Virus record (IMG/VR): IMGVR_UViG_3300002143_000235
Location: 1-64,000 of that record
DNA: 64,000 nucleotides
Direction: 5' to 3' (one strand)
Shown here: positions 3,716-34,729 of the stretch, piece after piece
Layout: each line of letters begins with the position of its first letter
How positions within the stretch are numbered: the stretch's first letter is position 1
Made by a program: the position numbers and the translations under genes
The notes under the pieces: model-generated
Database searches by the model: none
What the model saw: the letters and a program-made list of their open reading frames with translations, nothing else
What the model was told of the DNA's origin: nothing

Positions 3716-4789
3716 TTAAATATTAAAATCGTCAAAAATCATATCATCAGTATCTTGCTTGAAAGCGCCCGTTGTATAAGATATAATTTGAGTTTGTTGT
3801 GGCGCTTCTTGAACAGCATTTCCACCAATCCAGTTACCAATCCATCCAATAGGATTTGCTACTTTTTCAAAAATTGGTTCCATTTTGATAATCTTCATAC
3901 GCTGATTTGTTAAATACTTCATATACTGAATAAGAATTTCAGCATTTAGACCAATCATTGAACCATCTTTAAACAAATATCTTGCCCAATCCATTTCTTC
4001 TTGAGCAGCGTCGCGGTACATTTGTGCTGTAATATCTTTACATTCAGCAACAACCTCATGAAAACCTTCACTAGCATCTTCAGCCATGATTTTCAAAATA
4101 AGTGATGAAAATCCCATATGCAAGTTCTCGTCACGTGCAATAAGTGATATGATCTTTGCATTACCTTCCATCTTCTTATTCTGTGCAAAAGCAAATGAGC
4201 AAGCGAATGAAACGTAAAAACGAATACCTTCAAGAATGTTGATAGATACAAGTGTTAAATATAATTTCTTTTTTTGATTGTGAATTGTATCATCTGGAAT
4301 TGCATTAATCAATTCATCATAATATTTTGTTACCGACATTGCACGATCAAGTATACGTTGATCAGTAAGAACTGTATCAAGTACTTCAGAAGGATTTGTA
4401 TAAATCTGTTTGATGATGTAGGTATAAGAATACGAGTGAAGAGTTTCCATGAATTCCCATGCTTTAGCAAACGCTTCAACTTCTGGATTTGTACAGTTCT
4501 CAAGTAAATGCGAAATTCCACGTGATTGAATTGTATCAAGCAAAATCTGGTATTTAAGGTTGAGTGTGAATACAACTTGTTGAAATTCAGGAAGTGAATT
4601 AAAGTCCATCTTATCCTTACTCAAGTTAATTTCTTCTGGTCTCCACATGTAAGCAAGTTGTTGCTTGAACATGTTGAAGATCTTTTCATATTTTGGATGA
4701 TCGTATCGTTGAACTCCCAAACCATGTGGGCCAAAGAACATCGGCTGTGAACGTGTGTCCTCAGTGCTTGTATTTATTATCGATTTCAT
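3716..4789 (-). CDS. nrdB: class Ia ribonucleotide reductase beta subunit with atypical APQQTQIISY tail
   Basis: WRPEE (W48), YQILLD (D84), ETLHSYSY (E115/H118/Y122), ILEGIRFYVSFA (E204), RDENLH (D237/E238/H241); tail Tyr356 equivalent present. Confidence 0.96.
   Translation of the reverse strand: MKSIINTSTEDTRSQPMFFGPHGLGVQRYDHPKYEKIFNMFKQQLAYMWRPEEINLSKDKMDFNSLPEFQQVVFTLNLKYQILLDTIQSRGISHLLENCTNPEVEAFAKAWEFMETLHSYSYTYIIKQIYTNPSEVLDTVLTDQRILDRAMSVTKYYDELINAIPDDTIHNQKKKLYLTLVSINILEGIRFYVSFACSFAFAQNKKMEGNAKIISLIARDENLHMGFSSLILKIMAEDASEGFHEVVAECKDITAQMYRDAAQEEMDWARYLFKDGSMIGLNAEILIQYMKYLTNQRMKIIKMEPIFEKVANPIGWIGNWIGGNAVQEAPQQTQIISYTTGAFKQDTDDMIFDDFNI
3740..3789 (-). repeat. direct repeat copy 2 of nrdB 3' end (within nrdB)
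   Basis: catatcatcagtatcttgcttgaaagcgcccgttgtataagatataattt. Confidence 0.97.
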
Positions 4790-4818
4790 ATCTTATTTGT
4801 GTTTTGATTATAGACTAG

Positions 4819-4850
4819 AATGCACTGAAAGTCTGACCTTCCAGTGCATT
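4819..4850. terminator. stem-loop between nrdA and nrdB
   Basis: aatgcactg-aaagtctgaccttc-cagtgcatt inverted repeat. Confidence 0.55.
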
Positions 4851-4858
4851 TATTGGTA

Positions 4859-7141
4859 TTAGATAGAGCAAGCACCTCCTGCGCATGTTTCATCTGTACC
4901 CATATCATCAAGATCATCAGATTTTTTATCATCTGTGTTGGCATAGTAGATTGTCTTCAATCCCCATTTGTAGCTGTTGAAAATGTCAGTCATTACCGTC
5001 TTCAATGAGATTCCCTCAGCTGAGTACTCATAGTAGTGGTTTGCACTAATGGATTGATCAATCCATTTCTGAATGAAACCAACAATTTTTGTATAACCAT
5101 CATTAGATCCCATTTCAAATGCTTTTTGATATTTGTTCTTCAATCGAACAGACTCAGGAGCAACTTGTTTTACAACACCTGTCTTAGAACGCTTTGTAGT
5201 GATGAGTGATCTAATTGGTTCAATACCATTTGTAGCATTTTGAACTACTGCTGATGATTCTGCTGGCATAATAGCTGATAATACAGAATTGCGTAAACCT
5301 GCACCGTATTGTAATTCATATCTTAATGCTTCCCAATCACAAGAATATGGTCGTTTACATAATTCATCAAGATTTTTATTATATCGATCAATTGGTAAAA
5401 CACCTTGTGAATATGTTGTTTTATCATACCATTCACAAGCACCGAATTCTTTTGCTAATTTGTTTGATGCTACTAATAATGAATATTGAATTCGTTCAAA
5501 TAATTCATCAACTTTTTCGAGAGCCTCTGGATCAGTATATTTTAAATCTTGTTTAGCAAGCCAATATGCAAAATTAGTAACACCAACTCCTAAACTACGG
5601 CGTTTTAACATTTTTCTTGATGCATTAACTGGATAATCTTGGTGTTCAATTATAAAATCAAGTAATCGTACACAATATTCAGAACATTTATCTAGTTCTT
5701 CCATTGATTTTATATTTCCTAAATTAAGTGCTGCAAGTACACATAAAGCTATTTCACCTTCAGATAAATGTTCAGTTGATGGATCGTGGTCGATGTCATA
5801 AATTGATGTTAATTCTTTTGTTACTAAACATATTTCTACACATAGATTTGACATACGAACACGTTCAATGAATGGTGAATTAGAATTAACATTATCTATA
5901 TTCATGATATAGATTCTTCCAGTTCCAACACGCTCTTGGGCTATTAAATTCATTAATTCACGTGCCTTAATCGTCTTACGTTTTATTTTTTTATCATTTT
6001 CATATTTTACATACAATTCATCGAATTCAGCATTATCACCAAAAGCATCGTATAAACCTGGAACATCTGCTGGTGAAAATAAAGCAACATCTTCATTTTT
6101 TATAAAACGTTGAAAAATTAATTTTGATAATTGAATACCATAATCCATGTGTCGTACACGATTATCATCAGTTCCTTTGTTGTTCTTCAATATAACGACA
6201 TCTTCAATTTCTTGGTGCCACCAAGGAAAATAAATTGTTGCAGATCCTTTACGAATTCCACCTTGTGAACATGAATGTGTAGAGCTCTGAAATTGTTTAA
6301 AAAATGGAACAACTCCAGTATGTATAATTTCACCTCCACGAATCTCACTTCCAACACCACGAATTCTACCGCCATTAAGTCCAATACCAGCACGCTTAGA
6401 AACATATTTAGTAATTGCAGTATTTATGTGACAAATACTATCCAATGAATCACCAGTTTCTAATAATACACATGAACTATACTGTCTATTTGGTGTACGT
6501 ACACCAGCCATGATCGGTGTAGGTAATGATATTTTTTGCTGTGATATGAGATCATATAACTCTTTTACATGTTTTAATCTTACATCATGATCATAATTCA
6601 TAAATACTGTCATCGCTATAAGCATAAAAGCATATTGTGGCGTTTCGTAAATTGTTTTAGTTTTTCTGTGCTGAACCAAATACTTATCCATCAATTGCTG
6701 TAATCCAGCGTGTGTGAAATCATAATCACGTTTGTGTTTCAGATACAAATTCAATACAGAAACTTCTTCTGTTGTGTATTTCTCAAGAATGATTGGATCA
6801 TATACCTCACGTTTAATATTGTTAACAATCACATTCCATAAATGTGGCATATCTGTTTTTACCTCGAATACTTCTTTACGAAGAAGATAGTTTAAAAGAT
6901 TACCAGCCACATATTGATAATTCGGTGTACGCTCAGATATCATATCAACAGCAGATGTAATAAGTACATTGTGTATTTGACTTGTTTTAATTCCTGGAAA
7001 AAATTGAATTTCAGCATTCATAGCCACATCTGATGCTGAAACACCAGCAAGACCTTCTGTTGCCCATAAGAGCACCTTATTAATTTTTTCCGCATCTAAT
7101 GGTGTTTTTTCACCGTTTCGTTTAGTCACTTTTAACTCCAT
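4859..7141 (-). CDS. nrdA: class Ia ribonucleotide reductase alpha subunit with ATP cone
   Basis: VTKRNG ATP cone, PTPIMAGVRT..SSCVL, SNLCVEI, AIMPAESS, GLKTIYY, C-terminal CAGGACSI. Confidence 0.97.
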   Translation of the reverse strand: MELKVTKRNGEKTPLDAEKINKVLLWATEGLAGVSASDVAMNAEIQFFPGIKTSQIHNVLITSAVDMISERTPNYQYVAGNLLNYLLRKEVFEVKTDMPHLWNVIVNNIKREVYDPIILEKYTTEEVSVLNLYLKHKRDYDFTHAGLQQLMDKYLVQHRKTKTIYETPQYAFMLIAMTVFMNYDHDVRLKHVKELYDLISQQKISLPTPIMAGVRTPNRQYSSCVLLETGDSLDSICHINTAITKYVSKRAGIGLNGGRIRGVGSEIRGGEIIHTGVVPFFKQFQSSTHSCSQGGIRKGSATIYFPWWHQEIEDVVILKNNKGTDDNRVRHMDYGIQLSKLIFQRFIKNEDVALFSPADVPGLYDAFGDNAEFDELYVKYENDKKIKRKTIKARELMNLIAQERVGTGRIYIMNIDNVNSNSPFIERVRMSNLCVEICLVTKELTSIYDIDHDPSTEHLSEGEIALCVLAALNLGNIKSMEELDKCSEYCVRLLDFIIEHQDYPVNASRKMLKRRSLGVGVTNFAYWLAKQDLKYTDPEALEKVDELFERIQYSLLVASNKLAKEFGACEWYDKTTYSQGVLPIDRYNKNLDELCKRPYSCDWEALRYELQYGAGLRNSVLSAIMPAESSAVVQNATNGIEPIRSLITTKRSKTGVVKQVAPESVRLKNKYQKAFEMGSNDGYTKIVGFIQKWIDQSISANHYYEYSAEGISLKTVMTDIFNSYKWGLKTIYYANTDDKKSDDLDDMGTDETCAGGACSI

Positions 7142-8597: not shown

Positions 8598-9740
8598 ATG
8601 AGAAGACACATTAGCCAACACGTAGAAGCAAAAACAGCAGAACAGTTCTCGACCTTCAAACAAGGAGCCATGAATAGCGGAGTTGTTCGCAAGGTTGTTT
8701 TTCTTAATGAAATTGTTATCGTAAATGAAACCACTATTATGGTTAAGGGTGCTAAATTTGGTATGCACGCTGAAGCATTCAAACAACTCGTAAAATTCAT
8801 TGGACTTGATAGTAAAATTCTTGAGTCTATTGAAAAATCTCTTGGTGAACAAGTTTCACAAAAATTGCTTGATGTTATGAAACATGCAATCATGAGTCGT
8901 GATATTGCAAAACAACAAGTTTGTCTTTTGGTAAATACAAAAACAATTGAAATTGTTGGAATCAAAAAACGTGCTGAGGGAGTTCTTTCAAATAATGCAT
9001 TCTTTGATTTGTTTGAACAAACAATGAACAACCATACAGGAATGCAAATCAAAGATATGTCAGTAACACCCTCTGGCGGAATTACAATCTCTGTAACAAA
9101 CACCAATTGGGAATTTAATGTACCTGGAGTTACTGATGAAGTATTTCAATCAGGTTTGACATTCATCAATATGCACGATAAAACTATTGTTGTTCCATTT
9201 AATGAGCGTTTGACTTGTACAAATGGTATGGTAACAGCAGAAAATGGTTTGGCTATTACATTGACTGATGATAAAGCCGGAAGTCTTGAGGCATTCTTCT
9301 CAGCAGTTACAAAAATTCAACAAAATTCTCAATTTGAGGATGAATTTAAAGCACAAATTCGCAAATTGATGTCTACTCAAGCATCGTATTCTGAAATGCT
9401 TATGTGTCATAAAGCATTGGTTTATAATGTCCAAGATGAAACAAATCTTGAAGTTGCTGAAACAATGGAATCATTCATTCCAGTACGTGAAATGAAACAA
9501 GCTTACCTTGCTAAGAATGTTGATCTCAATACATTAAAAGCATCAACACACAAAACAATTCGTACAATGCTTACAGGTTGGGAACTTGTTAACGCTCTTA
9601 CAGACGTTGCATCTCACCCTCAACGTGAAGGATTGAATTTGAAATACGGAAACTCAATCTTCGAACTTCAAAGAACTGCTGGTAGACTTGCATTCAAATC
9701 ACCGTTAGATCTTGAAAATCGAGTAATTCAACTTTTCTAA
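8598..9740 (+). CDS. DUF932-like protein
   Basis: VVPFNERLTCTNGMV resembles the R(L)xCxNG motif of DUF932. Confidence 0.5.
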   Translation: MRRHISQHVEAKTAEQFSTFKQGAMNSGVVRKVVFLNEIVIVNETTIMVKGAKFGMHAEAFKQLVKFIGLDSKILESIEKSLGEQVSQKLLDVMKHAIMSRDIAKQQVCLLVNTKTIEIVGIKKRAEGVLSNNAFFDLFEQTMNNHTGMQIKDMSVTPSGGITISVTNTNWEFNVPGVTDEVFQSGLTFINMHDKTIVVPFNERLTCTNGMVTAENGLAITLTDDKAGSLEAFFSAVTKIQQNSQFEDEFKAQIRKLMSTQASYSEMLMCHKALVYNVQDETNLEVAETMESFIPVREMKQAYLAKNVDLNTLKASTHKTIRTMLTGWELVNALTDVASHPQREGLNLKYGNSIFELQRTAGRLAFKSPLDLENRVIQLF

Positions 9741-9770
9741 CAATTATTAATTGAACACTTTTAATTGTTA

Positions 9771-9799
9771 AAACCCGGACCAATTGGTCCGGGTTTTTT
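9771..9799. terminator. bidirectional intrinsic terminator
   Basis: aaaacccggac-caattg-gtccgggtttttt. Confidence 0.85.
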
Positions 9800-9800
9800 A

Positions 9801-9810
9801 GTATATAAAA
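9801..9810 (+). promoter_or_regulatory. phage-specific TATATAA promoter motif (also 7322, 11320, 13385, 13622, 18490, 18960, 38600, 41760, 45105, 55304, 56892, 60192, 61942 on +; 997, 2424, 7173, 28237, 35581, 51659, 53545, 54223, 61904 on -)
   Basis: recurrent intergenic (C/G/A)ATATATA(A/C/G), mostly a few tens of nt before start codons, reminiscent of the T4 late TATAAATA. Confidence 0.7.
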
Positions 9811-9829
9811 AGAAACGATACATTTCTGA

Positions 9830-10915
9830 ATGTTTACTAATATACATCATTGGCTTCTTATTGAATCTTTTACACCATCAAAATTACGCAGTCCTGAATC
9901 AGTAGTTGCTCCAGAAAATCTAAAGGATATTGATTGGAAAGATTTACAGATTGTTGAACTTGGTGATGATGGAAATAATATGATCAATCTTGGTATTCAA
10001 TTACCAGGTGAAGACAAACCAAATGATGGTATTGTTCTTGATATTCAAATGATACATGATGAGTTATACCAACCACATATGTTCTTCTCAGCTGAAATGC
10101 AAGGTGGTGGACTCGGTTTCAAAGTCCTTCTTAAATTTATTCATGAGTTTGGACACTTCTATTCTGGTGACGGGCGCCAACAAAATAAGACACAGATTCC
10201 TGTAATTTTTGATAAGTTAAAAGCACAAGGTGATATTGATGCATATCGGTTACCACATGGTCATTTATTTATATTAAAAAGCAATCCTGACCGTAACTAT
10301 TTGGTCAATAAATACGTAAATAAAGAGAAAAAGATGATTACAACAATAGATGAGTTCTGCTCTGTAAATGAATCTAGTTCTGAACCAAGAATGATGTCTT
10401 TTATCATTCCTGAAAAGAAAAACTGGATCGAGCAGGGTGAAAATGTAGGTATACGTTTCATGGGAAAAACATATTGGATTAAAGAATCAGATCGTAAATT
10501 TTTTGAAGACAATATTGGTAACTCTATTGGATTTAAATATTTTCCTAGTGCAATGTATGTTGAGATGCCAACAGTATTGAAACAAAACATTGTAGCAAAG
10601 ACTGAATCATTTATATCTGAGTCTGATCTACGTAACTATTCAACATTAAATAAAGTCCATCATCTTTTAAAAAATGATAAAGTCACTGTTTATTATTTTG
10701 GACCACATGATACTCCTGATACAGCATTAAAATTTGATGCAAAAATTGTTACACCGCCATACATCTCACGTAACAATGTAGAAGCTGTAGTTAGATCCAT
10801 AGATCCAACAGGTGAAAAATACTTAGGTGACGGAGTTGTATGGTATAAACGTGGACGTTGGGTACATGTTGGAAAATGGAATACCCGAAAAGTAAATAAG
10901 AGAATACTACGATGA
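9830..10915 (+). CDS. putative head-internal polyprotein; GNAT-like first module, internal second leader MITTIDEF
   Basis: MFTNIHHWLLIES leader; QGGGLG motif; internal KKMITTIDEFCSVNESS and TESFISES. Confidence 0.6.
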   Translation: MFTNIHHWLLIESFTPSKLRSPESVVAPENLKDIDWKDLQIVELGDDGNNMINLGIQLPGEDKPNDGIVLDIQMIHDELYQPHMFFSAEMQGGGLGFKVLLKFIHEFGHFYSGDGRQQNKTQIPVIFDKLKAQGDIDAYRLPHGHLFILKSNPDRNYLVNKYVNKEKKMITTIDEFCSVNESSSEPRMMSFIIPEKKNWIEQGENVGIRFMGKTYWIKESDRKFFEDNIGNSIGFKYFPSAMYVEMPTVLKQNIVAKTESFISESDLRNYSTLNKVHHLLKNDKVTVYYFGPHDTPDTALKFDAKIVTPPYISRNNVEAVVRSIDPTGEKYLGDGVVWYKRGRWVHVGKWNTRKVNKRILR

Positions 10916-11310
10916 TTACAACAATAAAACAATTCAAACGTATAAATGAAAATCACGATGGTGTTGCTGCAAGCATAATTAGTAGATTTAGTAACATTTC
11001 AACCATTGATGAGGTTCGTGCATTCTTCAAAGCATTAATAGATGAACTCAGTTTATCATTTCACCCAGATGATTCATTTGACGGATATGGAAATCATGTT
11101 AATGGTCAATGGGTTGATTTATTTACACCAGAAGAAGCTACACAACTTGATGCAATTATGCAACAGTGTTGGAAAGTTTGTTACGATAATAATACTGATA
11201 TTTATACAATAGGTATGATACTTATGGGATATGAACCTGAAACTGGTACAGACACAACAATCGACCCTGCTGATATACATATTTACAAAAGTGTATTGGA
11301 CATTCAATAA
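10912..11310 (+). CDS. putative head-internal protein (MITT leader)
   Basis: MITTIKQFKRINEN; ATGA overlap. Confidence 0.7.
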   Translation: MITTIKQFKRINENHDGVAASIISRFSNISTIDEVRAFFKALIDELSLSFHPDDSFDGYGNHVNGQWVDLFTPEEATQLDAIMQQCWKVCYDNNTDIYTIGMILMGYEPETGTDTTIDPADIHIYKSVLDIQ

Positions 11311-11349
11311 TACTCAAACCATATATAAAAAAAAGATATTTTAAACATA

Positions 11350-11745
11350 ATGTTCACATCAATAAATGAATGGAAGTCTCTAAATGAGATGAATCAACAA
11401 GAGATCAAATTATCATTTAATCTCAATACACCATACAAATGGGGACCTGGATGGACAGGAACACCAGAACAACATGAAGAGATGGATGGAATAGCTGCCG
11501 GTATAATTGGTATGTTACAATTACAAGATAAACATAATGAATGGAACGTTCCTGAAGCAACTGGAACTGGTATTGTGCAATATGCATATCTTCACCCAAT
11601 GGAATATGTATTCAGACTCAGTGAAAACGATCGTGTAACAATAGATAGAATTATCGATGTAGTAAAAAAGACTATAAGTATGACAGACTTTGTTAATATT
11701 GAAAGTATCAAACTGAAAACGCCAGAAGGTTATACAACATTATAA
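11350..11745 (+). CDS. putative head-internal protein (leader family)
   Basis: MFTSINEWKSLNEM; ATATATAA upstream. Confidence 0.7.
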   Translation: MFTSINEWKSLNEMNQQEIKLSFNLNTPYKWGPGWTGTPEQHEEMDGIAAGIIGMLQLQDKHNEWNVPEATGTGIVQYAYLHPMEYVFRLSENDRVTIDRIIDVVKKTISMTDFVNIESIKLKTPEGYTTL

Positions 11746-11773
11746 AGAAAGGACAACAATTGTTGTCCTTTTC
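11746..11773. terminator. intrinsic terminator
   Basis: aaggacaa-caattg-ttgtccttt. Confidence 0.8.
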
Positions 11774-11809
11774 TATTAAACAACTTGTGTTTAAATATGT
11801 ATAATCACC

Positions 11810-12916
11810 ATGACAAAATCAAACACATTAGACACAAAATACCTTGATCTGGTACAGGATATCATTTCAAATGGTTATGACAGCGGTGATCGTACTGGAA
11901 CCGGTACACGCAAACTTTTTGGTAAGATGATCAGACATAATATGTCTGAAGGCTTCCCACTCCTCACATCAAAGAAGATGTTCTTTAAAGGTGTATTCCA
12001 TGAACTTATTTGGTTTCTAAAAGGAGACACAAACATCAAATACCTTGTAGACAATAATGTTTACATCTGGGTAGGAGACTGCTACAAAAAATACGCAACA
12101 CTCTGTTCAGCTAACTCAGATGAATTCAATGAATGGATGCGTGATAATGGAGATGGAACACTTTCTATGTTTACCCGTGATGAATTCATTGAAAAGATCA
12201 AGACTGATGATATCTTTGCTGCAAAGTGGGGTGAATTGAATAAGGTTTATGGCGCAGAATGGGTAAACTGGCGCGACCAAGTGAATCAAATTCAGGAACT
12301 TATTGATACACTTAAAAACAATCCTGATTCAAGACGTATGCTAGTTACAGCATGGGATCCGATCAATGTTGCAAAGGCAGTTCTTCCACCATGTCACTAT
12401 GCTTTCCAGGTATTTACACGTGAACTTACCTTAGAAGAACGAAAGAACATTTTCTTTGATACAAAAAATAATTATTACCATCCTCATTATGATAATGATA
12501 CACGTAGTAATTTGAACAGTTATGCGATTGCTGACGGTGATTTATTTTTTGAAGATCTCATGAACGAACCGTCTATCAATGTTCCAAAGCGTTCAATATC
12601 ATTGATTTACAATATGCGTAGCGTTGATATTGGGTTAGGAATTTGTTTTGATGAAGCACTATATGGCTTATTATTACAAATGATTGCACAATGTGTAAAT
12701 ATGATACCAGAAGAACTTGTGTGCTCACTTGGGGATACACATCTTTATAATAATCATATCGAGCCTATCAAAGCCCAATTTAAAGCTGAACACTTTGATC
12801 TTCCTATTGTATCACTAAATCCTGACGTTACGGACATCTTCCAATTCAAGTTTGAAGACATCACTGTTTATAACTATCAATCAAGTCCAGTAATAAAATT
12901 AGAGCTTTCTAATTAA
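11810..12916 (+). CDS. thyA: thymidylate synthase family enzyme with N177D substitution
   Basis: DRTGTGT, FHELIWFLKG, SRRMLVTAWDP, LPPCH, MRSVD, GDTHLYNNH; GICFDEA instead of GLPFNIA. Confidence 0.85.
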   Translation: MTKSNTLDTKYLDLVQDIISNGYDSGDRTGTGTRKLFGKMIRHNMSEGFPLLTSKKMFFKGVFHELIWFLKGDTNIKYLVDNNVYIWVGDCYKKYATLCSANSDEFNEWMRDNGDGTLSMFTRDEFIEKIKTDDIFAAKWGELNKVYGAEWVNWRDQVNQIQELIDTLKNNPDSRRMLVTAWDPINVAKAVLPPCHYAFQVFTRELTLEERKNIFFDTKNNYYHPHYDNDTRSNLNSYAIADGDLFFEDLMNEPSINVPKRSISLIYNMRSVDIGLGICFDEALYGLLLQMIAQCVNMIPEELVCSLGDTHLYNNHIEPIKAQFKAEHFDLPIVSLNPDVTDIFQFKFEDITVYNYQSSPVIKLELSN

Positions 12917-12945
12917 ATTATCAAATAAATTAGTATATTTGTGGT

Positions 12946-13386
12946 ATGTGTGATACAAAACATACCATATATCTTAAAATGTGCATGGAGCTTGCAGAGG
13001 CATCAAAATGTCGCAAGCTCCATGTTGCATCACTTATTGTGCATAAACACAAGATCATTGCAACTGGTGTAAATGGAACTCTTCCAGGACACGAAAACTG
13101 TTGCGATAAATTTGCTCATCTTACAGATGATGAATTTGTAAATGCACATAATGGCTGGTCGAGTAGAAATGAAATTCATGCCGAGATGTCTGCACTTCTT
13201 ACTGCTGCAAAATCATCTACTGAGATCAAAGAAGACAGTATCATGTACTGTACACATGAACCATGTGACAATTGTGCTAAACATATTGCTTATACAGGAA
13301 TCAAAGAAGTATACTTTATTCATAAATATCATAACAATCTATCTGATAATATTTTTGGTTTGACTCTAAAACAACTTTCAATTTGA
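12946..13386 (+). CDS. dCMP deaminase
   Basis: IIATGVNG, HAEMSAL, HEPCDNCAK zinc-deaminase motifs. Confidence 0.92.
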   Translation: MCDTKHTIYLKMCMELAEASKCRKLHVASLIVHKHKIIATGVNGTLPGHENCCDKFAHLTDDEFVNAHNGWSSRNEIHAEMSALLTAAKSSTEIKEDSIMYCTHEPCDNCAKHIAYTGIKEVYFIHKYHNNLSDNIFGLTLKQLSI

Positions 13387-13412
13387 TATATAAGTGAAAG
13401 ATTTTTTTACTA

Positions 13413-13610
13413 ATGTTAACTAATATAAACGAATTTAAATCGGAAGCCCATAAATTTTGGTGGAATAGATTAGGACAATCTACAAAAATTGATATTTGTC
13501 GACGTTCTAGTTCTAAAGTTAGTGGGCTTAGTGGTTGTGGTTTATCAGATTTTAATCCTGATAAACTTTCAGATCATACAATTAAAGCTCTTTATAATTT
13601 GAATCATTAA
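13413..13610 (+). CDS. small leader-family protein
   Basis: MLTNINEFKSEA; GATATATAA upstream. Confidence 0.6.
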   Translation: MLTNINEFKSEAHKFWWNRLGQSTKIDICRRSSSKVSGLSGCGLSDFNPDKLSDHTIKALYNLNH

Positions 13611-13649
13611 ATTTATCAATTAATATATAAGTGAAACCGTCAATTTGAC

Positions 13650-14243
13650 ATGATCACTTCTATTGATAAATTTCGTCAACTTAATGAGAATCAGCAAGCT
13701 GATTTACAGCAGCTTGCATCAGAAATAAAACGTACTTATCCACAGTGTCGATTTAGTATTCGAACATCATACAATACTATTCGTATTGCAATTATTTCTG
13801 CACCTATAGAATTACGTCTTGATTCATCAAGAACAAACGAACCAGTAAATCATTATTACATCAAATCAAATTATGCTGATATGCCTCAAGCACAAGAGTT
13901 GCTTCAAGGTATTGCAGATATTGCTCTTCGTAATAATCGTGAAGTTTCACATGATGGTGATTATGGAAGTATACCCAATTACTATGTAACAATGACTGTT
14001 GGTGAATGGGATAAACCTTTCACTGTGGCTGGATCAACTGTTACACAATTACCTGTTGAATCAACAAATGAAGCAGCAATGAAAGAACATTATGTTCTTT
14101 TTAAAGGTGATGATGTATTAGGTGGTTTTAATACTAAAGAAGAAGCATTAATTGCTTTTGCACAACAACCTAAAACGGTTAATAGATGGAGAGAGCAAGC
14201 ACAGCTTTACAAATTAATCAAAGAAAATAAAATTGTTCGCTGA
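13650..14243 (+). CDS. putative head-internal two-module protein
   Basis: MITSIDKFRQLNEN; internal ESTNEA. Confidence 0.7.
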   Translation: MITSIDKFRQLNENQQADLQQLASEIKRTYPQCRFSIRTSYNTIRIAIISAPIELRLDSSRTNEPVNHYYIKSNYADMPQAQELLQGIADIALRNNREVSHDGDYGSIPNYYVTMTVGEWDKPFTVAGSTVTQLPVESTNEAAMKEHYVLFKGDDVLGGFNTKEEALIAFAQQPKTVNRWREQAQLYKLIKENKIVR

Positions 14244-15430
14244 TGAGAATCATATACACACAACAAGCCATTCCAAATCAGATAAATAAATCTATATTCT
14301 TAGCTGGTCCATCACTTCGTCCTGGACAGGATGGAATATCATGGCGTATAAATGCTTTAGAAATTCTTCGTGTACTTGAATACGATGGTGTTGTGTTTGT
14401 ACCTGAATCTGAAGATGGAAGTTTTGATGATAATTTCAACTGGAAAACACAAGTCATGTGGGAGTCGAAATGTCTACGTATGTCTGACAATATTTTATTT
14501 CACATTAATCGTAATATTGAATCTGGATTATTAGGTCTTACAACAAATGATGAATGGGGATTTTGGAAGGACTCAGGTAAATGTGTACTTTCTATTGAAT
14601 CTGGAGCAGACAAAACAGATTATCAAGAGTGGTGGGCTAAAGAACTTAAAGTTCCGACATTCAATGATTTATTTAGTGCACTTCGTCATATTATAAAGAT
14701 ACAACAAGATGCACCACGTGTTGATGGTGAACGAATGATACCACAAGAAATTTGGTTGCTTGATCAGTTTCAATCTTGGTATAAACAATTAAAAGCAAAT
14801 GGAAACTGGATCAGTGATGCTCGAGTTTTAAATACCTATCGCATTCCTTCAAACAATAAAATATTTGCATTTTCTCTTTGGGTAAACGTTTTTATTCGTA
14901 ATGAAAATCGTTACAAAAATAATGAATTTATATTCTCAAGACCTGATATCAGTTCATGTGTGATGTATTATCCAAATAATAATTTGATGGATACAGAGAT
15001 TGTTCTTGTATCTGAATTCAGATCACCAGTTAATAATACAAAAGGCCTTGTTTATGAAATACCGGGTGGTTCCAGTGTGAAACCTGGTGAAGATCCAATG
15101 GCTGTTGTTATTGAAGAACTCAAAGAAGAAACAGGAATCGGCGGGATGAATCTTGCACGACTTGAATACATTAGTGCACGTCAACTAGCAGCAACAATTC
15201 TTACACATAAATGTCATTTGTATGGTTATACTATGTCTGATGCAGAGTATATAAATGTTAAGAACAATGTAGGTAAGATTTTTGGAAACGAAGCTGACAC
15301 AGAAAGAACAGAACTACATATTTTTACACTGCAAGAGATTATAGATAATGATTATATTGATTGGTCGAATCTTGGTATGGTAATGAATGTATTAAACACA
15401 ACAACTATAAAAAACAGTCCTAATGTATAA
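14243..15430 (+). CDS. nucleoside 2-deoxyribosyltransferase-like plus Nudix hydrolase fusion
   Basis: SIFLAGPS..WR N-terminal domain; YEIPGGS..EELKEETGI Nudix box. Confidence 0.75.
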   Translation: MRIIYTQQAIPNQINKSIFLAGPSLRPGQDGISWRINALEILRVLEYDGVVFVPESEDGSFDDNFNWKTQVMWESKCLRMSDNILFHINRNIESGLLGLTTNDEWGFWKDSGKCVLSIESGADKTDYQEWWAKELKVPTFNDLFSALRHIIKIQQDAPRVDGERMIPQEIWLLDQFQSWYKQLKANGNWISDARVLNTYRIPSNNKIFAFSLWVNVFIRNENRYKNNEFIFSRPDISSCVMYYPNNNLMDTEIVLVSEFRSPVNNTKGLVYEIPGGSSVKPGEDPMAVVIEELKEETGIGGMNLARLEYISARQLAATILTHKCHLYGYTMSDAEYINVKNNVGKIFGNEADTERTELHIFTLQEIIDNDYIDWSNLGMVMNVLNTTTIKNSPNV

Positions 15431-15840
15431 TGTATACAACAATCAATGAATTTCGTACAAATGAAAGATATGACAATCATAATAGAGTAATACCGCGTGA
15501 TTTCTTCAATGAATCTAAATTATTGAAGTGTATGGGACAGCTAGCTTTAAAAATTCTTGATGGTAGAGTTCCTGAAGGAATAACTATTGAGATAGAAGAA
15601 TCTGGTGAAGCTTTCAATATTGCTTTATCTAATGAATATGATTGCTTATATGTTACAAACTATCCAATAACAGTTAATGGTGAAAATGTTTTTTTTGGTA
15701 CAACATATAATTCAAAAGCTTTGTACCCTATGGTATGTTATGATGATGATGTAGAATTTAATGTATTTGATGATCAAGGTAATTTTACAAATAAATTTAT
15801 TGAACAATTTGTAAATCAAACAGAAAATGTTCAGGCATGA
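15430..15840 (+). CDS. putative head-internal protein (leader family)
   Basis: MYTTINEFRTNE. Confidence 0.7.
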   Translation: MYTTINEFRTNERYDNHNRVIPRDFFNESKLLKCMGQLALKILDGRVPEGITIEIEESGEAFNIALSNEYDCLYVTNYPITVNGENVFFGTTYNSKALYPMVCYDDDVEFNVFDDQGNFTNKFIEQFVNQTENVQA

Positions 15841-16829
15841 TAACAACAATCAATGAATTTCGTGCAATTAATGAGATTGGTGAAGGTACGAAATCATATA
15901 ATTATACAATAGAACCATCACCTTTTGGTGGATATTCTGGATTTTTTATTACTGAACGTAATGAAGAATATGAAATTTATATGACACATACGTACACACA
16001 AGATGGTGAAAAAACAAATATTTCATTTGATTTAAAAGGATATGATCATGAAGCAGATAAAGAAACTAATACACATGATCAATATCGTATTATGACAACA
16101 ATTATATTAGTTGTAAAAGATGTATTAAAAAGAGAACCAGGTATTAATATTATTGAATTTGAGGCTAAAGAGAAAAAAATAGGGTCAACAAATCAACGAT
16201 TAATGTTATATCTAGCTTATGCTAAAAAACATCTTGGCCCAGAATGGCAAATATTAAAAGGTGTAAACTCCGCAACAATTATAAAAGGAAAACCAGGTTT
16301 AGAATATACAAAGAGTATTGATTCATTAAATGATGAATCAACTAATGAAAGTCTATCATTTCCAGCAGCACATGGCATCAACCAGGAAGTTGCTGTTGTT
16401 GATATTGATGGTAATCTCCAATACAGTGGAAGGGTGTCAAAGGTATCATTCACTGCACAGAAAGTTTTCTATGATGTAGTAAGTGATTATGACGGTACTA
16501 TTGAATGTGATATTGATTCAGTATTTGTAGAACGTTCTATTGGTATTATTTCTGAAACTGAAATGGAAGAGATGTTTGGTAAAGAAAAAACTGAAGAAAT
16601 TCTTACACGTAAAAATGAATCTAGGGCATCAAATTTACAATCTACAAATCTTACATATAAGAGTGTTGAACGTAATGACATTTTATGGCTTACGGTTATG
16701 CTAAAACCACGTAACTCAGCACCTGGTAACAGAATGGGTGAAATGGGTGTTGTTAAAGTTCGTGTACTTGATACTTTTTATGGTATGGATAAACTTAAAC
16801 ATTTGAAAGCAACAGATAAGATAATGTAA
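15837..16829 (+). CDS. putative head-internal polyprotein (three modules)
   Basis: MITTINEFRAINEI; internal STNES and RKNES. Confidence 0.7.
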   Translation: MITTINEFRAINEIGEGTKSYNYTIEPSPFGGYSGFFITERNEEYEIYMTHTYTQDGEKTNISFDLKGYDHEADKETNTHDQYRIMTTIILVVKDVLKREPGINIIEFEAKEKKIGSTNQRLMLYLAYAKKHLGPEWQILKGVNSATIIKGKPGLEYTKSIDSLNDESTNESLSFPAAHGINQEVAVVDIDGNLQYSGRVSKVSFTAQKVFYDVVSDYDGTIECDIDSVFVERSIGIISETEMEEMFGKEKTEEILTRKNESRASNLQSTNLTYKSVERNDILWLTVMLKPRNSAPGNRMGEMGVVKVRVLDTFYGMDKLKHLKATDKIM

Positions 16830-27100: not shown

Positions 27101-28232
27101 ATGTAAGATCAACACCACCAGCCATCTCAGCTAAAGCATTACTGTATTGTGCGACAATTGTGTCATATGTAAGAGGTAATGAATAAACGTTATTATTATC
27201 CAATACAACTTCTTGATCGATTAAAATATTGTTTCCTGCAAGAAAAATCTGACATGTTACTGTCTCTGTTACAAGAGACGTATTAACAGTTATTGTACTA
27301 GTTGTTCTATCAATGGATTCAACAATATGTGTAGCAAGGTTAGTAAGTGATACTACACCATTATCTAATACTTGAATTTGATCATTAACCTTCAAAAATG
27401 AAGGAATATATGGCATATAAATTGTTTGACCATTAAAATCTGTACTACCATTACTTACCATAATATTAGATGTACGGATCTGAATATTTAACAACACACG
27501 ATCTCCAGCAATTGGTGTGAATGCACCAGGAGCAAGGAAGAATGCATCTTTTTGACGAACATTACAAACTGTATCAACCGTATAGAGTCCGTCTGCATCC
27601 GTATTACCAACTAATGATAATTTTTTATTTGGATAAAGCTTTGCTGTAATACTAGTTTCATTATAAGCTGGTTCACCAACAGTTTTTTGTACAAGTTCAA
27701 TCACGTCAAGCGGTACAATCTGTGCATTCAAGATGTTAAATGTAGGAAGTGCGTTGTCATTTGTTGTTGTCGTGTATACAAGAACACGACCAGTCTCGAC
27801 AGCCAGAATCTTGAATACTTGTGTGTTAATAATATTTGTATCAAAATCATTATTATGAAAACCATTCAAATCCGTAAAATTACACCACATTCCTTTATAA
27901 AAATCTTTCTCTATACCTGCAGCATAGATCCACTTTGTATTATAGTTTGCATCGTTGTTTACAACCTGAATATCAGTAATGGTATAGGCATTCAACGCAC
28001 CGGGTATGGTAGTCATCCCATTCGTGTTGAATGCCTGGAAGCGCTCAAGTGTTGCGCTAAATGTATTGTTGCTACCATCCAATTTTTCGAATGCGTAAAT
28101 GCCTTGTGTCTTGTATGTATCTACAGAATTCTTGTCAAAGAATATAGAAGAAGAGTGAACCAATGTCTCAGCATTGAAATCAGTATTTAACTGGTGTCCC
28201 TCTTTGTTGAAGAAGATCAAATTTTCTGTCAT
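24153..28232 (-). CDS. large virion structural protein (baseplate/tail-associated, tentative)
   Basis: 1359 aa, Thr/Val/Asn-rich beta composition with internal repeated modules (YYTPFTTDV / YATPFNTDD); TATATAA promoter. Confidence 0.55.
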   Translation of the reverse strand: MTENLIFFNKEGHQLNTDFNAETLVHSSSIFFDKNSVDTYKTQGIYAFEKLDGSNNTFSATLERFQAFNTNGMTTIPGALNAYTITDIQVVNNDANYNTKWIYAAGIEKDFYKGMWCNFTDLNGFHNNDFDTNIINTQVFKILAVETGRVLVYTTTTNDNALPTFNILNAQIVPLDVIELVQKTVGEPAYNETSITAKLYPNKKLSLVGNTDADGLYTVDTVCNVRQKDAFFLAPGAFTPIAGDRVLLNIQIRTSNIMVSNGSTDFNGQTIYMPYIPSFLKVNDQIQVLDNGVVSLTNLATHIVESIDRTTSTITVNTSLVTETVTCQIFLAGNNILIDQEVVLDNNNVYSLPLTYDTIVAQYSNALAEMAGGVDLTYNVDTDTLEITTEFTDSYIVVNFSSISNTEVVTPLIVTTQTYDVYPISVKESLDIYHEYTEHSSVYQRSIVFSVIDPSGLAIIINGRNYYTPFTTDVATTLAAFVAGYTVELSKIGIDILNTTTNIVNDTIRITAAYPNVPIIITLVNTDATNCVTRYMDTNINNIKSQLIITIDGIQYATPFNTDDDQTVADWVTTHGPILDSLNIIVVNVPATSIIQIDVRDPEKRLDISYNLGYLPKMGDVAVYETLYSTVNNGGVVAGNEIICAPGLYDFSSYYSVGQKLSINGAFMNIQNRSYNVVAITDQRISLSYQGSFWNQALAFAINIVSDYFIRYPRMGTTDLAERAKFRWTWYNTQINDFFLYDFSGSQLVPAFPYFPAYNGPIPLCGLDGEIQLQLNFTPNTDITQISNPLVQQTIFDTLSYTIPFTDEAFDGDIEPDPMQVFIGYRAGFEGWNKARLHLELVEDIKFTLLTDVNLIDDLWVFNENYVELQSLSIPIDLRLLGFRTGQDVVFTAKDMDADGQQLGILKNAGLKFTISDVQTNRLYFTVNVTNETSVCVVPKNTMPFVDINGDPIMLNRRLEVSVSVLPKVVSYFDVYGESEDEDERHRINLDNRNLNILKMQDFFIFREADIKEEGVDWILLNRKRKELIEIYGELFNSLSSYKSVIQAINFFGYNDLTFTEYFQNIDPENKKFGQLFNLELLNLLNKDVAGYTYSNVGYETLRNAGYRKTNLFSLNYRITDEDGNFVDAYSLDEVKVKLLGLKRWLTENIIPIGTKITDINGKYQMRNDFIIQHDTYMTKNYRVEEYADSIDFDVSGYLQPVTEGSNNYDIRVEFTSAAPQNWYEYKIRTFQLEQWTNISYLVDSYVFYNNAIWVSNLITQHTQVPGLSSVWEKTSIDRLPNVQIIRDYKTVLDQVGFTVNELVDPYFVVEVYWHSGYGCTRKAIKSYSLPITIQPQLNIYPVNLSVFDYNFNFDYNQL

Positions 28233-28304
28233 GAATTATATATTGAAAAGACTTCAATTTGTCTGAATGTTCAAACAATTATAAAACAAGGATGTAAAAG
28301 AAGT

Positions 28305-28856
28305 ATGACAAATTCAAAACAAAATAAACAAACAATACATGTAAATCTGTTTGCAGGACCAGGAACGGGTAAAAGCACAACGGCAGCAGGCGTCTTTTCA
28401 AAATTAAAGCAGCAGGATATTGACTGCGAATTGATATCTGAATACGCAAAACAGTTGGTATGGGAAGAATCATTTCCTAAGATGTCTAATCAAATTTATA
28501 TTTTTGGTAAACAGCACAAAAGACATCATATTCTTGATGGTAAGGTTGATGTTGTTATCACTGATTCACCATTTCCTTTGGGACTTATATATGATGAAGG
28601 TAGAACTGAATTTCTAAAAGAGTTATGTATGTCAGAATATAACAAACTCAACAATATAAGCATCTTCATCAGTCGTAAGAAAAAGTACAATCCTAATGGG
28701 CGCATGCAAACACTTGATCAAGCAATTGAAAAAGACAACGAAGTTCGTTCATTCTTAGAAGAGAATGGTATACACTATATAACACTAGACGGCGACGAAA
28801 CATTGATCGATCAGGTCGTTACATTGGTGAACAATGCCCTTAAAAATAGGAAATAA
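28305..28856 (+). CDS. P-loop kinase/ATPase (AAA_28/NadR-like)
   Basis: NLFAGPGTGKST, ELISEYAK, VITDSP; likely start MTNSK. Confidence 0.75.
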   Translation: MTNSKQNKQTIHVNLFAGPGTGKSTTAAGVFSKLKQQDIDCELISEYAKQLVWEESFPKMSNQIYIFGKQHKRHHILDGKVDVVITDSPFPLGLIYDEGRTEFLKELCMSEYNKLNNISIFISRKKKYNPNGRMQTLDQAIEKDNEVRSFLEENGIHYITLDGDETLIDQVVTLVNNALKNRK

Positions 28857-31532: not shown

Positions 31533-32135
31533 TTAATACCAAGGTTTGTTAGTTTTGACAGCTGAAAAATTATAATTAAAATTATTACCAACATCACCTT
31601 TCTTTATGATGTTAACTACTGCACCTTTTTTGTAATAATTTGGAATATCTTCATTTATATCCATTGTATCAAGTTTAGCAATTATTTCATTTGCACGTTT
31701 CTTAGAAATACGAAGAAATTGAATCATTCTTTCTTTAAACTCATTTACATTTTTATAAGTCTCTTCAAATCCCATTGATTGTCTTGAACCAATTTCTTCA
31801 CTGTGTTTAATAAATATGTAGTACACAGGATCGATATATTTTTCTTTCACTCTTACATGTACCCATTCGTCCACAATATCAACATTAACATCGTATATAG
31901 GCCATTTTAATTTGATCTCTTTAGCTACTTTGTATGCATCATCAATATCTTCTTGACCAGGTGTTTCATCTCCACTGTGTTCACGTGTTGTAAACATAAT
32001 TTCATTGTCATCAGAATTACCATCATTATAATATAATGTGGTACCTATATAGTTTTCCATAAAATCTATAATTTGTTGAAAGTCTGAACTACGTGATTCA
32101 TTTATTTTTTTCCATTCGTTAATTGTTGTTATCAT
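31533..32135 (-). CDS. putative head-internal protein (leader family)
   Basis: MITTINEWKKINES. Confidence 0.75.
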   Translation of the reverse strand: MITTINEWKKINESRSSDFQQIIDFMENYIGTTLYYNDGNSDDNEIMFTTREHSGDETPGQEDIDDAYKVAKEIKLKWPIYDVNVDIVDEWVHVRVKEKYIDPVYYIFIKHSEEIGSRQSMGFEETYKNVNEFKERMIQFLRISKKRANEIIAKLDTMDINEDIPNYYKKGAVVNIIKKGDVGNNFNYNFSAVKTNKPWY

Positions 32136-34211: not shown

Positions 34212-34729
34212 AAAGTATAAAGTTTACTTTCTATCTCTGGAAATTCACCAGGAAATAATTCAAAATGACGTTCGTATGACCCATCGATTCTAATGGGTTT
34301 ATCCATTACTAAAAATTTTCCATCACCAAAATCATCACCTATCTGACCTTTGATATATTGATTGTCAGATACTTTATAATAAATAATATCATTTAATTTT
34401 AACGATGATAAATCTGTAACTAATTTATAAGCTGCTTCAACTGGTGCACTATTGTTTAGAACATCTAATGCTTTTTTAATAGCCCCAGGATTAAGAATAT
34501 TTACTTGATTATTTTCATCTTTTACTGCAAGGTACGTACCAGTAGGAATGTGATATCCCATAGGATTGTGTGGAACTTGTACATTAAATTTTTTATATAA
34601 ATCAAGTCGTTCGCCGTAACCCAAAATGGTTACCACACCGCGATTATAGAGATCAAGCTTTTTACCGATAAGCTTATCGTAATGTGCATTTTCATTGTGT
34701 TGCATCCACTCATTAATTGTTGTTATCAT
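34208..34729 (-). CDS. putative head-internal protein (leader family; true start 34729)
   Basis: MITTINEWMQHNEN with ATGA overlap at 34726-34729. Confidence 0.7.
   Translation of the reverse strand: MITTINEWMQHNENAHYDKLIGKKLDLYNRGVVTILGYGERLDLYKKFNVQVPHNPMGYHIPTGTYLAVKDENNQVNILNPGAIKKALDVLNNSAPVEAAYKLVTDLSSLKLNDIIYYKVSDNQYIKGQIGDDFGDGKFLVMDKPIRIDGSYERHFELFPGEFPEIESKLYTL

What the first reader, a model, noticed from the sequence alone, without database searches (positions are those of the whole stretch)
11810..13386. ThyA homolog with Asp at Asn177 next to dCMP deaminase: possible dCMP methylase route
Seen: MRSVDIGLGICFDEALY, with GAT at 12650-12652 where thymidylate synthases have the invariant N (GLPFNIA); the catalytic PCH is intact. 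Known: N177D switches E. coli TS to dCMP, and T4 dCMP hydroxymethylase has Asp there. Inference: the enzyme makes 5-methyl- or 5-hydroxymethyl-dCMP, either for a modified genome or for dTMP via the adjacent deaminase, bypassing dUMP.
Basis: partly seen in the sequence, partly recalled or inferred. Interest (0 to 1): 0.65.

Follow-up and report, generated by a model that had tools for sequence, protein, structure and literature searches.

The report
Phage dCMP methylase and deaminase module
A large uncultured freshwater phage carries a thymidylate-synthase relative whose base-reading residue is switched to suit cytosine, next to a cytosine deaminase. This is a recently described phage way of making 5-methylcytosine DNA, and thymine from it, so it is a new example of a known system.

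Summary
ORF 11810-12916 is a complete ThyA-family enzyme. It has Asp281 (GAT 12650-12652) where E. coli ThyA has Asn177, and the catalytic Cys195 is intact.

The Asp is not an error. A second assembly from another sample has it, and so do 39 of 41 members of a well-supported clade of big-phage ThyA proteins.

The enzyme keeps the features published as marking methyl transfer rather than hydroxymethyl or hydroxyl transfer:
- Leu three residues before the Cys (Ec L143)
- Val at Ec V93
- a full-length C-terminal tail

The 314-kb record encodes a DHFR. It has no second ThyA, ThyX, dUTPase or C5 DNA methylase.

The dCMP-family deaminase (12946-13386) lies 29 bp downstream. No such deaminase was found within 10 kb of about 35 Asn-type relatives.

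ThyA(Asp177) next to a deaminase was described for Xp12 and for metaviromes (Yang et al. 2021; 2024 preprint). There, tested ThyA homologs make 5mdCMP and the deaminases prefer 5mC nucleotides, giving thymidine nucleotides without dUMP.

What is new is modest: an independent Asn-to-Asp lineage in jumbo phages, with a different set of partner genes. Product and DNA modification remain untested.

The parts
11810..12916 (+). ThyA-family enzyme, 368 aa, with Asp at the Ec-Asn177 position. Predicted dCMP C5-methyltransferase (5-methyl-dCMP synthase).
   Evidence: Pfam PF00303 E 2.8e-81. Alignments. AF2 model pLDDT 89.8, closest to E. faecalis and L. casei TS with TM 0.85-0.9.
12650..12652 (+). GAT codon for Asp281, equivalent to E. 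coli Asn177 / L. casei Asn229, the pyrimidine-specificity residue.
   Evidence: Conserved as Asp in 39 of 41 clade members.
12383..12394 (+). Codons Leu192-Pro-Pro-Cys195. Cys195 is the catalytic nucleophile. Leu192 is equivalent to Ec Leu143, which is Asp/Glu in hydroxymethylases and 5-hydroxylases.
   Evidence: ctt cca cca tgt. Rule taken from PMC6400193 and PMC13326640.
12946..13386 (+). dCMP-deaminase-family zinc deaminase, 146 aa, 29 bp downstream on the same strand. Predicted to deaminate 5-methyl-dC nucleotides to thymidine nucleotides.
   Evidence: PF00383 E 2.9e-22, phrog_174 E 3e-41. T4 Cd E 4.5e-22. The only PF00383 gene in the 314-kb record.
11748..11805 (+). Hairpin (11748-11771) after the upstream gene, then a promoter-like TAAACA-17-TATAAT (11777-11805) just before the ThyA start. 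No terminator-like site lies between ThyA and the deaminase.
   Evidence: These are consensus matches only.
14243..15430 (+). Fusion protein, 395 aa: N-terminal nucleoside 2-deoxyribosyltransferase-like domain plus C-terminal Nudix of the ADP-ribose-pyrophosphatase type. It is linked to ThyA(Asp) in most relatives examined (L006, L007, L016, L017, L055, L057; not in L054 or L056). Its role in the pathway is unproven.
   Evidence: PF15891 E 1.6e-7, PF00293 E 1.8e-4. 516 homologs. AF2 pLDDT 90.9. Foldseek finds NudF/NUDT5 at E 1e-10. Co-occurrence.
28194..28856 (+). P-loop kinase-like protein (AAA_28; PHROG 'thymidylate kinase'). Candidate dNMP kinase for 5mdCMP/dTMP. In relatives it sits directly after the deaminase.
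   Evidence: PF13521 E 1.7e-5. phrog_2107 E 2.3e-14. Deaminase-AAA_28-PDDEXK block in L007, L017, L055.
3716..7141 (-). Ribonucleotide reductase small (3716-4789) and large (4859-7141) subunits. They supply deoxycytidine nucleotides upstream of the module.
   Evidence: Pfam families listed (PF00268; PF03477, PF00317, PF02867).

Best explanation
The gene at 11810-12916 encodes a folate-dependent dCMP C5-methyltransferase. It has the thymidylate-synthase scaffold and chemistry: Cys195 attacks C6, the one-carbon unit comes from CH2-THF, and hydride transfer gives DHF. Asp281 in place of Asn makes it read cytosine instead of uracil.

Its product, 5-methyl-dCMP, would then take two routes. Part is phosphorylated (candidate kinase 28194-28856) and built into phage DNA as 5-methylcytosine. 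Part is deaminated, as a mono- or triphosphate, by the co-transcribed deaminase (12946-13386) to thymidine nucleotide. The phage would then need no dUMP-specific thymidylate synthase. The phage DHFR (G000 276645-277136) recycles the DHF.

Shown here: the residues, the fold, the gene order, the clade-wide conservation and the gene inventory. Inferred: the substrate, the product, the deaminase's substrate, and the presence of 5mC in virion DNA.
For: - Asp at Ec-N177, with all catalytic and phosphate-binding residues kept.
- Published methyl signature met: Leu192 at Ec L143, Val146 at Ec V93, and a C-terminal tail of the same length as E. coli's (rules in PMC6400193 and PMC13326640).
- The genome encodes DHFR but has only this one ThyA and no ThyX. 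The DHFR's obvious phage partner is therefore this enzyme.
- No dUTPase, MazG, PRA-PH or C5 DNA methylase in 314 kb.
- Asp is fixed in a 41-member clade with SH-aLRT 100.
- A deaminase lies within 10 kb in 5 of 8 Asp-type loci examined, and in none of about 35 Asn-type loci outside the clade.
- Literature: Asp177 ThyA homologs are the top marker of cytosine-modified metavirome contigs (PMC8670742). In 10.1101/2024.12.05.627091, 5 of 7 deaminase-linked Asp177 ThyA homologs, plus Xp12 ThyA, made 5mdC in E. coli, and many linked deaminases prefer 5mC.
- The Xp12 and PaMx74 modules likewise hold ThyA(Asp), a deaminase and DHFR.
Against: - There is no biochemical or DNA-chemistry evidence for this phage.
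- The enzyme is only about 29% identical to Xp12 ThyA and keeps His at Ec H147, the second residue that separated modified from unmodified contigs in MetaGPA. Function is therefore read from signatures, not from orthology.
- Two of the seven Asp177 homologs tested in the preprint did not give 5mdC.
- The deaminase is closest to T4 Cd, a canonical dCMP deaminase. 5mC preference is polyphyletic and cannot be predicted from sequence.
- No clear dCTP-removing enzyme was identified. The linked Nudix looks like an ADP-ribose pyrophosphatase.
- Three Asp-type relatives have no deaminase within 10 kb.
- The record is about 80% complete, so a second TS could lie in the missing part.
Confidence: 0.62

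Rival explanations
1. The pathway is purely metabolic. dCMP is methylated and all of it is deaminated to dTMP/dTTP, so the virion DNA carries ordinary cytosine. The module is only a dUMP-free route to thymidylate.
For: The genome is about 31% GC, so most of the methylated flux would have to end as T anyway. No recognisable dCTPase (MazG, PRA-PH, dUTPase family) was found to exclude dCTP. No dUTPase is present, which fits a route that avoids dU nucleotides.
Against: In the studied cases (Xp12, PaMx74, MetaGPA contigs), Asp177 ThyA goes with DNA in which C is replaced. Five Nudix-type proteins could serve as a dCTPase. A kinase-like gene travels with the deaminase in relatives.
Confidence: 0.15
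2. The enzyme is a dCMP hydroxymethylase (T4 gp42-like) or a 5-hydroxy-dCMP synthase (RB69 gp48-like), feeding a hypermodified cytosine.
For: It shares Asp at Ec-N177 with those enzymes.
Against: It has Leu, not Asp/Glu, three residues before the catalytic Cys. It has Val, not Ser/Thr, at Ec V93. It has a full C-terminal tail, whereas gp42 lacks one. A DHFR is present though hydroxymethylation yields THF. It is only 24% identical to gp42 and lies far from it in the tree. I did not search the genome for glycosyl- or carbamoyltransferases.
Confidence: 0.08
3. It is still, or also, an ordinary thymidylate synthase acting on dUMP made by a canonical dCMP deaminase. On this reading Asp281 is tolerated or gives dual specificity.
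For: The protein is 41% identical to E. coli ThyA and keeps H147, D205 and the tail. Two members inside the clade (P0010, P0063) carry Asn, so the scaffold works either way. P0010 also has an adjacent deaminase (L016). The deaminase is most like T4 Cd.
Against: N177D and N229D mutants of E. coli and L. casei TS switch preference to dCMP (cited in PMC8670742; structure 1njc appears). Asp is fixed in 39 of 41 clade members together with co-varying active-site changes: D81V, Q97E, R99 to hydrophobic. This points to selection for a different substrate.
Confidence: 0.12
4. Artefact: the Asp is a sequencing or assembly error, or the gene is decaying.
For: None found.
Against: The protein is identical in two assemblies from two samples. 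Asp is present in dozens of relatives. The frame is open and full length, and the predicted fold is confident.
Confidence: 0.01

Closest known systems
Xanthomonas phage Xp12 / Pamexvirus (PaMx74, AXL1) module: pyrophosphohydrolase - ThyA(Asp) - dCMP deaminase - DHFR
   Same: A ThyA homolog with Asp at Ec-N177 lies directly next to a dCMP-family deaminase, with DHFR in the genome and no second TS. The published model is dCMP to 5mdCMP, then DNA 5mC plus thymidine nucleotides by deamination.
   Different: The ThyA proteins are only about 29-31% identical, and the window's clade arose separately inside Asn-type big-phage ThyA. Xp12 ThyA has Pro at Ec H147 and His at Ec D205, whereas the window keeps His and Asp. 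The deaminases are barely related (phmmer E 6e-5 to PaMx74, no hit to Xp12). There is no MazG/HAD pyrophosphohydrolase, and DHFR lies 264 kb away. The host phage is a jumbo phage of over 300 kb and 31% GC, not a 60-kb siphovirus of 67% GC.
Metavirome ThyA(Asp177) + mSCD deaminase pairs (Yang et al. eLife 2021; Yang, Lee et al. bioRxiv 2024, mSCD-B5)
   Same: The same two-gene signature, within 3 kb. Those authors mined IMG/VR for exactly PF00383 + PF00303 with Asp177. The window's contig is an IMG/VR record and fits those criteria.
   Different: mSCD-B5 acts on triphosphates and its neighbourhood resembles Xp12's. I could not tell whether the window's pair was among those tested. The window's deaminase is nearest to T4 Cd and cyanophage S-TIM5 deaminase.
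T4 gp42 dCMP hydroxymethylase with T4 Cd deaminase
   Same: Asp at the specificity position. The phage also encodes a dCMP-family deaminase, RNR and DHFR.
   Different: gp42 has Asp145 (Ec L143) and Ser94 and lacks the C-terminal tail. The window protein has Leu, Val and the tail. T4 also has its own canonical TS (td), which the window's genome lacks.
Engineered E. coli N177D / L. casei N229D thymidylate synthases (dCMP methylases; PDB 1njc)
   Same: A canonical TS scaffold with a single Asn-to-Asp switch. The window protein is structurally closest to L. casei / E. faecalis-type TS, including the small-domain insert.
   Different: The natural enzyme has further co-varying changes around the active site (Ec D81V, Q97E, R99V, F171G, P175C, I178E, S180L). 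It also has a roughly 57-residue insert after the catalytic strand, which is shared with Asn-type big-phage relatives.

Membership tests
Thymidylate synthase ThyA superfamily (PF00303) | Profile match over the curated cut-off, and the TS fold | tested here: met
   273 bits against a cut-off of 24.3. AF2 model pLDDT 89.8, TM 0.85-0.92 to solved TS.
Thymidylate synthase ThyA superfamily (PF00303) | Catalytic Cys146, E58, Y94, R126/R127, R166, S167, D169, H207, Y209 (E. coli numbering) | tested here: met
   All are invariant in alignment A2. The Cys195 codon was read directly.
Canonical dUMP-specific thymidylate synthase | Asn at position 177 | tested here: not met
   Asp281, GAT 12650-12652.
dCMP-directed ThyA homologs | Asp at Ec-177 | tested here: met
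   Shared with Xp12, PaMx74 and T4 gp42.
dCMP C5-methyltransferase (5mdCMP synthase, Xp12 type of function) | Bulky hydrophobic residue at Ec L143 (three residues before the Cys) | tested here: met
   Leu192, ctt 12383-12385. Rule from PMC13326640.
dCMP C5-methyltransferase (5mdCMP synthase, Xp12 type of function) | C-terminal tail that seals the folate site for hydride transfer | tested here: met
   The tail ...PVIKLELSN has the same length as E. coli's ...PGIKAPVAI.
dCMP C5-methyltransferase (5mdCMP synthase, Xp12 type of function) | DHFR available to recycle DHF | tested here: met
   G000 276645-277136, PF00186 E 3.4e-42.
dCMP C5-methyltransferase (5mdCMP synthase, Xp12 type of function) | Orthology to Xp12/PaMx74 ThyA | tested here: not met
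   29-31% identity. Separate lineages in the tree. It works like the Xp12 enzyme but is not a member of that lineage.
dCMP C5-methyltransferase (5mdCMP synthase, Xp12 type of function) | Product is 5-methyl-dCMP, and virion DNA has 5mC | not testable with these tools
   Needs an enzyme assay, or LC-MS or bisulfite treatment of phage DNA.
dCMP hydroxymethylase (T4 gp42) | Asp/Glu at Ec L143, Ser/Thr at Ec V93, no C-terminal tail | tested here: not met
   Leu192, Val146, tail present.
5-hydroxy-dCMP synthase (RB69 gp48 / DLP3 gp80) | N177D together with L143E | tested here: not met
   Leu at that position.
dCMP/cytidine deaminase family (PF00383) | Profile match, and the H-A-E and P-C-x-x-C zinc motifs | tested here: met
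   78.9 bits against a cut-off of 25. Motifs visible in the alignments.
5mC-selective deaminases linked to ThyA(Asp177) (mSCD) | Gene within 3 kb of a ThyA homolog with Asp177 | tested here: met
   29-bp spacer, same strand.
5mC-selective deaminases linked to ThyA(Asp177) (mSCD) | Preference for 5-methyl-dC nucleotides over dC nucleotides | not testable with these tools
   The trait is polyphyletic and no sequence rule has been published.

The most novel reading that the evidence does not exclude
This jumbo-phage clade is an independently evolved dCMP methylase system, still only one residue class away from an ordinary TS (two in-clade members carry Asn). Its partner genes differ from the Xp12 type. 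The deaminase is T4-Cd-like and may work on 5mdCMP rather than 5mdCTP. The deaminase pairs with a kinase. A conserved fusion of a deoxyribosyltransferase-like domain and an ADP-ribose-pyrophosphatase-like Nudix stands where Xp12-type phages have a MazG/HAD dCTPase. If the fusion proved to be the enzyme that clears or reshapes the canonical dC pool, or if the route served only to make thymidylate without dUMP, that would be a new variant of pyrimidine rewiring.
Probability: 0.15. Interest if true: 0.6.

Novelty: new member of a known kind. Interest (0 to 1): 0.35.

Why it matters
Phages that replace cytosine with 5-methylcytosine escape many restriction enzymes. They are also the source of 5mC-selective deaminases now being developed for methylome sequencing.

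This locus adds a jumbo-phage lineage in which the Asn-to-Asp switch arose separately from Xp12 and T4. The lineage has natural Asn members that could serve as built-in controls, and a deaminase from a different branch of the family.

It is a reasonable candidate for enzyme mining, and for studying how few changes turn a thymidylate synthase into a dCMP methylase. It does not open a new question.

Tried and rejected
- **Read-level check of the Asp codon.** Contigs from four riverine, wastewater and other metagenome runs covered parts of 11810-12440 and 12845-13386 at 85-99% likeness. None covered 12650, so this gave no extra support.
- **Megablast of 9000-16000 against phage records.** No match.
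- **Palindrome and dinucleotide statistics of the 314-kb record, as an indirect sign of protected cytosines.** C-containing 4-mer palindromes have a median observed/expected ratio of 0.96 and AT-only ones 0.97. CpG is at 0.79 and TpG/CpA at 1.31. This is inconclusive.
- **The idea that the linked Nudix fusion is the dCTPase of the pathway.** Its fold is closest to ADP-ribose / NDP-sugar pyrophosphatases, so I do not claim that role.
- **Searches for the usual partner genes.** PRA-PH, MazG, dUTPase, ThyX and C5 DNA methylase are all absent from the record.
- **IMG/VR scan for relatives.** It gave only 39 loci, most of them Asn-type. Context statistics for the Asp clade therefore rest on eight loci.
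- **Not used.** I did not run the large representative protein search or complex prediction, because the family scans and the word search settled the identity.
- **Not searched.** I did not look for glycosyl- or carbamoyltransferases in the genome.

Full report
**What is there**

The window is the first 64 kb of a 313,708-bp IMG/VR virus record, about 80% complete and about 31% GC. ORF 11810-12916 (+) encodes a 368-aa protein that matches Pfam Thymidylat_synt (E 2.8e-81), TIGR03284 and phrog_160.

HMMER alignments to solved thymidylate synthases place 'RSVDIGLGICFDEALY' over 'RSADVFLGVPFNIASY'. In an alignment with E. coli ThyA, GAT at 12650-12652 encodes Asp281, the counterpart of Asn177. The nucleophile Cys195 (TGT 12392-12394) is kept. 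So are E58, W80, Y94, R126, R127, R166, S167, D169, H207 and Y209.

An AlphaFold model (pLDDT 89.8) is closest to the E. faecalis and L. casei type of TS, with TM 0.85-0.92. The roughly 57-residue insert after the catalytic strand is shared with Asn-type relatives, so it has nothing to do with specificity.

The next gene, 12946-13386, follows after 29 bp on the same strand with no terminator-like site between them. It is a dCMP-family zinc deaminase. It matches PF00383 at E 2.9e-22 and phrog_174 at E 3e-41. Its best solved relative is T4 Cd at E 4.5e-22, and the HAE and PCxxC motifs are present.

**Is the Asp real and meaningful?**

An independent 33-kb assembly from a second sample encodes the identical protein. 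Among the 120 best database hits, 39 have Asp and 81 have Asn.

In a maximum-likelihood tree of 80 sequences, the Asp proteins form one clade of 41 rows (SH-aLRT 100). The clade holds two Asn members, P0010 and P0063. It sits inside an Asn-type clade of big-phage ThyA proteins, including huge phages LR756502 and LR745206 and Flavobacterium phage immuto. Xp12/PaMx74 ThyA and T4 gp42 lie far outside. The tree used the quick method, which places long branches less reliably.

Asp comes with other clade-wide changes near the active site. IWDGDAY becomes IWVGDCY, YGKQWR becomes YGxEW followed by a hydrophobic residue, and the loop after Ec W101 is lost. This looks like selection for a different substrate rather than drift. 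The lineage made the Asn-to-Asp switch independently of Xp12 and T4.

**Which product?**

Two papers give sequence rules. Park et al. 2019 (PMC6400193) show three marks of hydroxymethylases:
- an Asp or Glu three residues before the catalytic Cys (Ec L143), which activates the water
- a Ser or Thr at Ec V93
- no C-terminal tail, the tail being what seals the folate site for hydride transfer in TS

Lee et al. 2026 (PMC13326640) use N177D plus a hydrophobic L143 as the mark of 5mdCMP synthases. They use N177D plus L143D/E for 5hm- or 5-hydroxy-dCMP synthases.

The window protein has Leu192, Val146 and a tail of exactly the E. coli length. The genome also encodes a DHFR at G000 276645-277136. It contains only this one ThyA homolog and no ThyX. 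DHFR is needed only if the one-carbon transfer is reductive. All of this points to a dCMP methyltransferase that makes 5-methyl-dCMP and DHF.

**The deaminase and the rest of the pathway**

The record has a single PF00383 gene. It has no dUTPase, MazG, PRA-PH or C5 DNA methylase.

In relatives the linkage is looser but still specific.
- The 79%-identical relative has the same ThyA-deaminase-fusion order (L006).
- Three jumbo-phage contigs carry the deaminase 5-8 kb away, in a block deaminase / AAA_28 kinase-like / PD-(D/E)XK nuclease (L007, L017, L055).
- Three Asp-type loci show no deaminase within 10 kb (L054, L056, L057).
- About 35 Asn-type loci outside the clade gave no phmmer hit to the window deaminase within 10 kb. 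The in-clade Asn member P0010 does have one next to it.

The window holds the kinase-like gene at 28194-28856 (AAA_28; phrog_2107 'thymidylate kinase', E 2.3e-14). This is a candidate for phosphorylating 5mdCMP or dTMP. RNR subunits lie just upstream at 3716-7141.

**Comparison with what is known**

MetaGPA (PMC8670742) found ThyA homologs with Asp177 to be the domain most strongly associated with cytosine-modified metavirome contigs.

The 2024 preprint (10.1101/2024.12.05.627091) reports the following:
- 70% of dCMP-deaminase genes on modified contigs lie within 3 kb of a ThyA gene, against 6% on unmodified contigs.
- Five of seven such ThyA homologs, and Xp12 ThyA, make 5mdC in E. coli.
- Many linked deaminases prefer 5mC.
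- mSCD-B5 acts on 5mdCTP and 5hmdCTP but not on monophosphates.

Those authors mined IMG/VR for exactly this gene pair. Xp12 and PaMx74 carry pyrophosphohydrolase / ThyA(Asp) / deaminase / DHFR side by side.

The window differs in several ways. Its ThyA lineage is separate (29-31% identity). It keeps His at Ec H147 and Asp at Ec D205. Its deaminase comes from a different branch of the family. It lacks a MazG/HAD enzyme, and its DHFR is distant. It is therefore a new member of a known kind, not a member of the Xp12 lineage.

**The third conserved gene**

ORF 14243-15430 is a fusion of a nucleoside 2-deoxyribosyltransferase-like domain (PF15891) and a Nudix domain. It has 516 homologs, and several of them lie on contigs whose lengths match those carrying ThyA(Asp) hits. 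It appears in most of the related loci examined.

Its model (pLDDT 90.9) shows that the C-terminal 210 residues resemble ADP-ribose / NDP-sugar pyrophosphatases such as NudF and NUDT5 (E 1e-10). I therefore do not assign it the dCTPase role. It may instead be a counter-defence or nucleotide-salvage enzyme that simply travels with the module.

**Limits**

Nothing here measures a product or a DNA base. The contigs laid on the region did not cover the Asp codon. Composition statistics were inconclusive. The genome is incomplete.

My confidence is about 0.6 for the full model: a methylase, deamination of 5mC nucleotides to T, and 5mC in the DNA. It is higher, about 0.75, for the narrower claim that the enzyme is dCMP-directed and transfers a methyl group.

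I named no other genetic code for the window. For the related locus L054 I only read TAG as X and tabulated what aligns to it.

Noticed in passing
window ORF starts 10912, 11350, 13413, 13650, 15430, 15837, 60204, 63048 (+); ORFs 31533-32135, 32132-32755, 32755-33351, 33348-34211, 34208-34747, 54238-55260 (-); internal at aa 169 of 9830-10915; further copies elsewhere in G000: About 20 otherwise unrelated ORFs begin with the same leader, M-I-T-T-I-N-E-W/F-x-x-I/F-N-E. One of them is the SMODS-associated Nudix at 32132-32755. The leader contains I-x-E twice. From memory, it resembles the T4 capsid-targeting sequence (MKTYQEFIAE), which the prohead protease cuts after L/I-x-E. These may be proteins packaged into the head and injected. 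G000 has a weak match to the T4-type prohead protease family at 96912-97241 (PF03420, E 1.9e-6, below the cut-off).
   Followed up: partly
L054:10001-11065 and neighbouring ORFs (GCA_902730665.1, contig CACVGB010000001.1, 292 kb): The ThyA(Asp) gene of this related huge phage has five in-frame TAG codons, and each aligns with a Trp in its relatives. Across the 21-kb locus, 7 of the 10 TAG sites with an aligned homolog face Trp. The database translated these as Gln. TAG may be read as Trp in that phage. No suppressor tRNA lies in the 21 kb held.
   Followed up: partly
window 14243-15430: A conserved fusion of a nucleoside 2-deoxyribosyltransferase-like domain with an ADP-ribose-pyrophosphatase-like Nudix. 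It has 516 homologs, mostly on large phage contigs, and is usually near ThyA(Asp). Its function is unknown.
   Followed up: partly
L016 (IMGVR_UViG_3300018410_000011) 8625-10164; P0010 and P0063: Two members inside the Asp clade carry Asn at the specificity site (PFNIASY / PFNITSY). P0010 is the window protein's nearest outgroup and still has an adjacent, more divergent deaminase. They may be natural reversions to dUMP use and would make useful controls.
   Followed up: partly
L056:10001-12011 (ENA ERZ19025893 scaffold_45): In this T4-like relative the ThyA(Asp) gene is followed by a GIY-YIG homing-endonuclease gene and then a 54-aa ORF that again hits Thymidylat_synt. This suggests the gene is split or invaded by a mobile endonuclease. 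L055 also has a GIY-YIG gene right after ThyA.
   Followed up: no
window 24153-28232 (-): A 1,359-aa ORF conserved in related jumbo phages (L007, L017) has no Pfam match and only a weak PHROG hit of unknown function.
   Followed up: no
window 32132-32755 (-), 35860-36531 (+), 46548-47153 (-); G000 65414-65788 (-), 74107-74298 (-): The genome has an unusually rich set of nucleotide hydrolases: one SMODS-associated Nudix, three further Nudix proteins besides the fusion, and an HD phosphohydrolase. Any of them could be the missing dCTPase or an anti-signalling enzyme.
   Followed up: no
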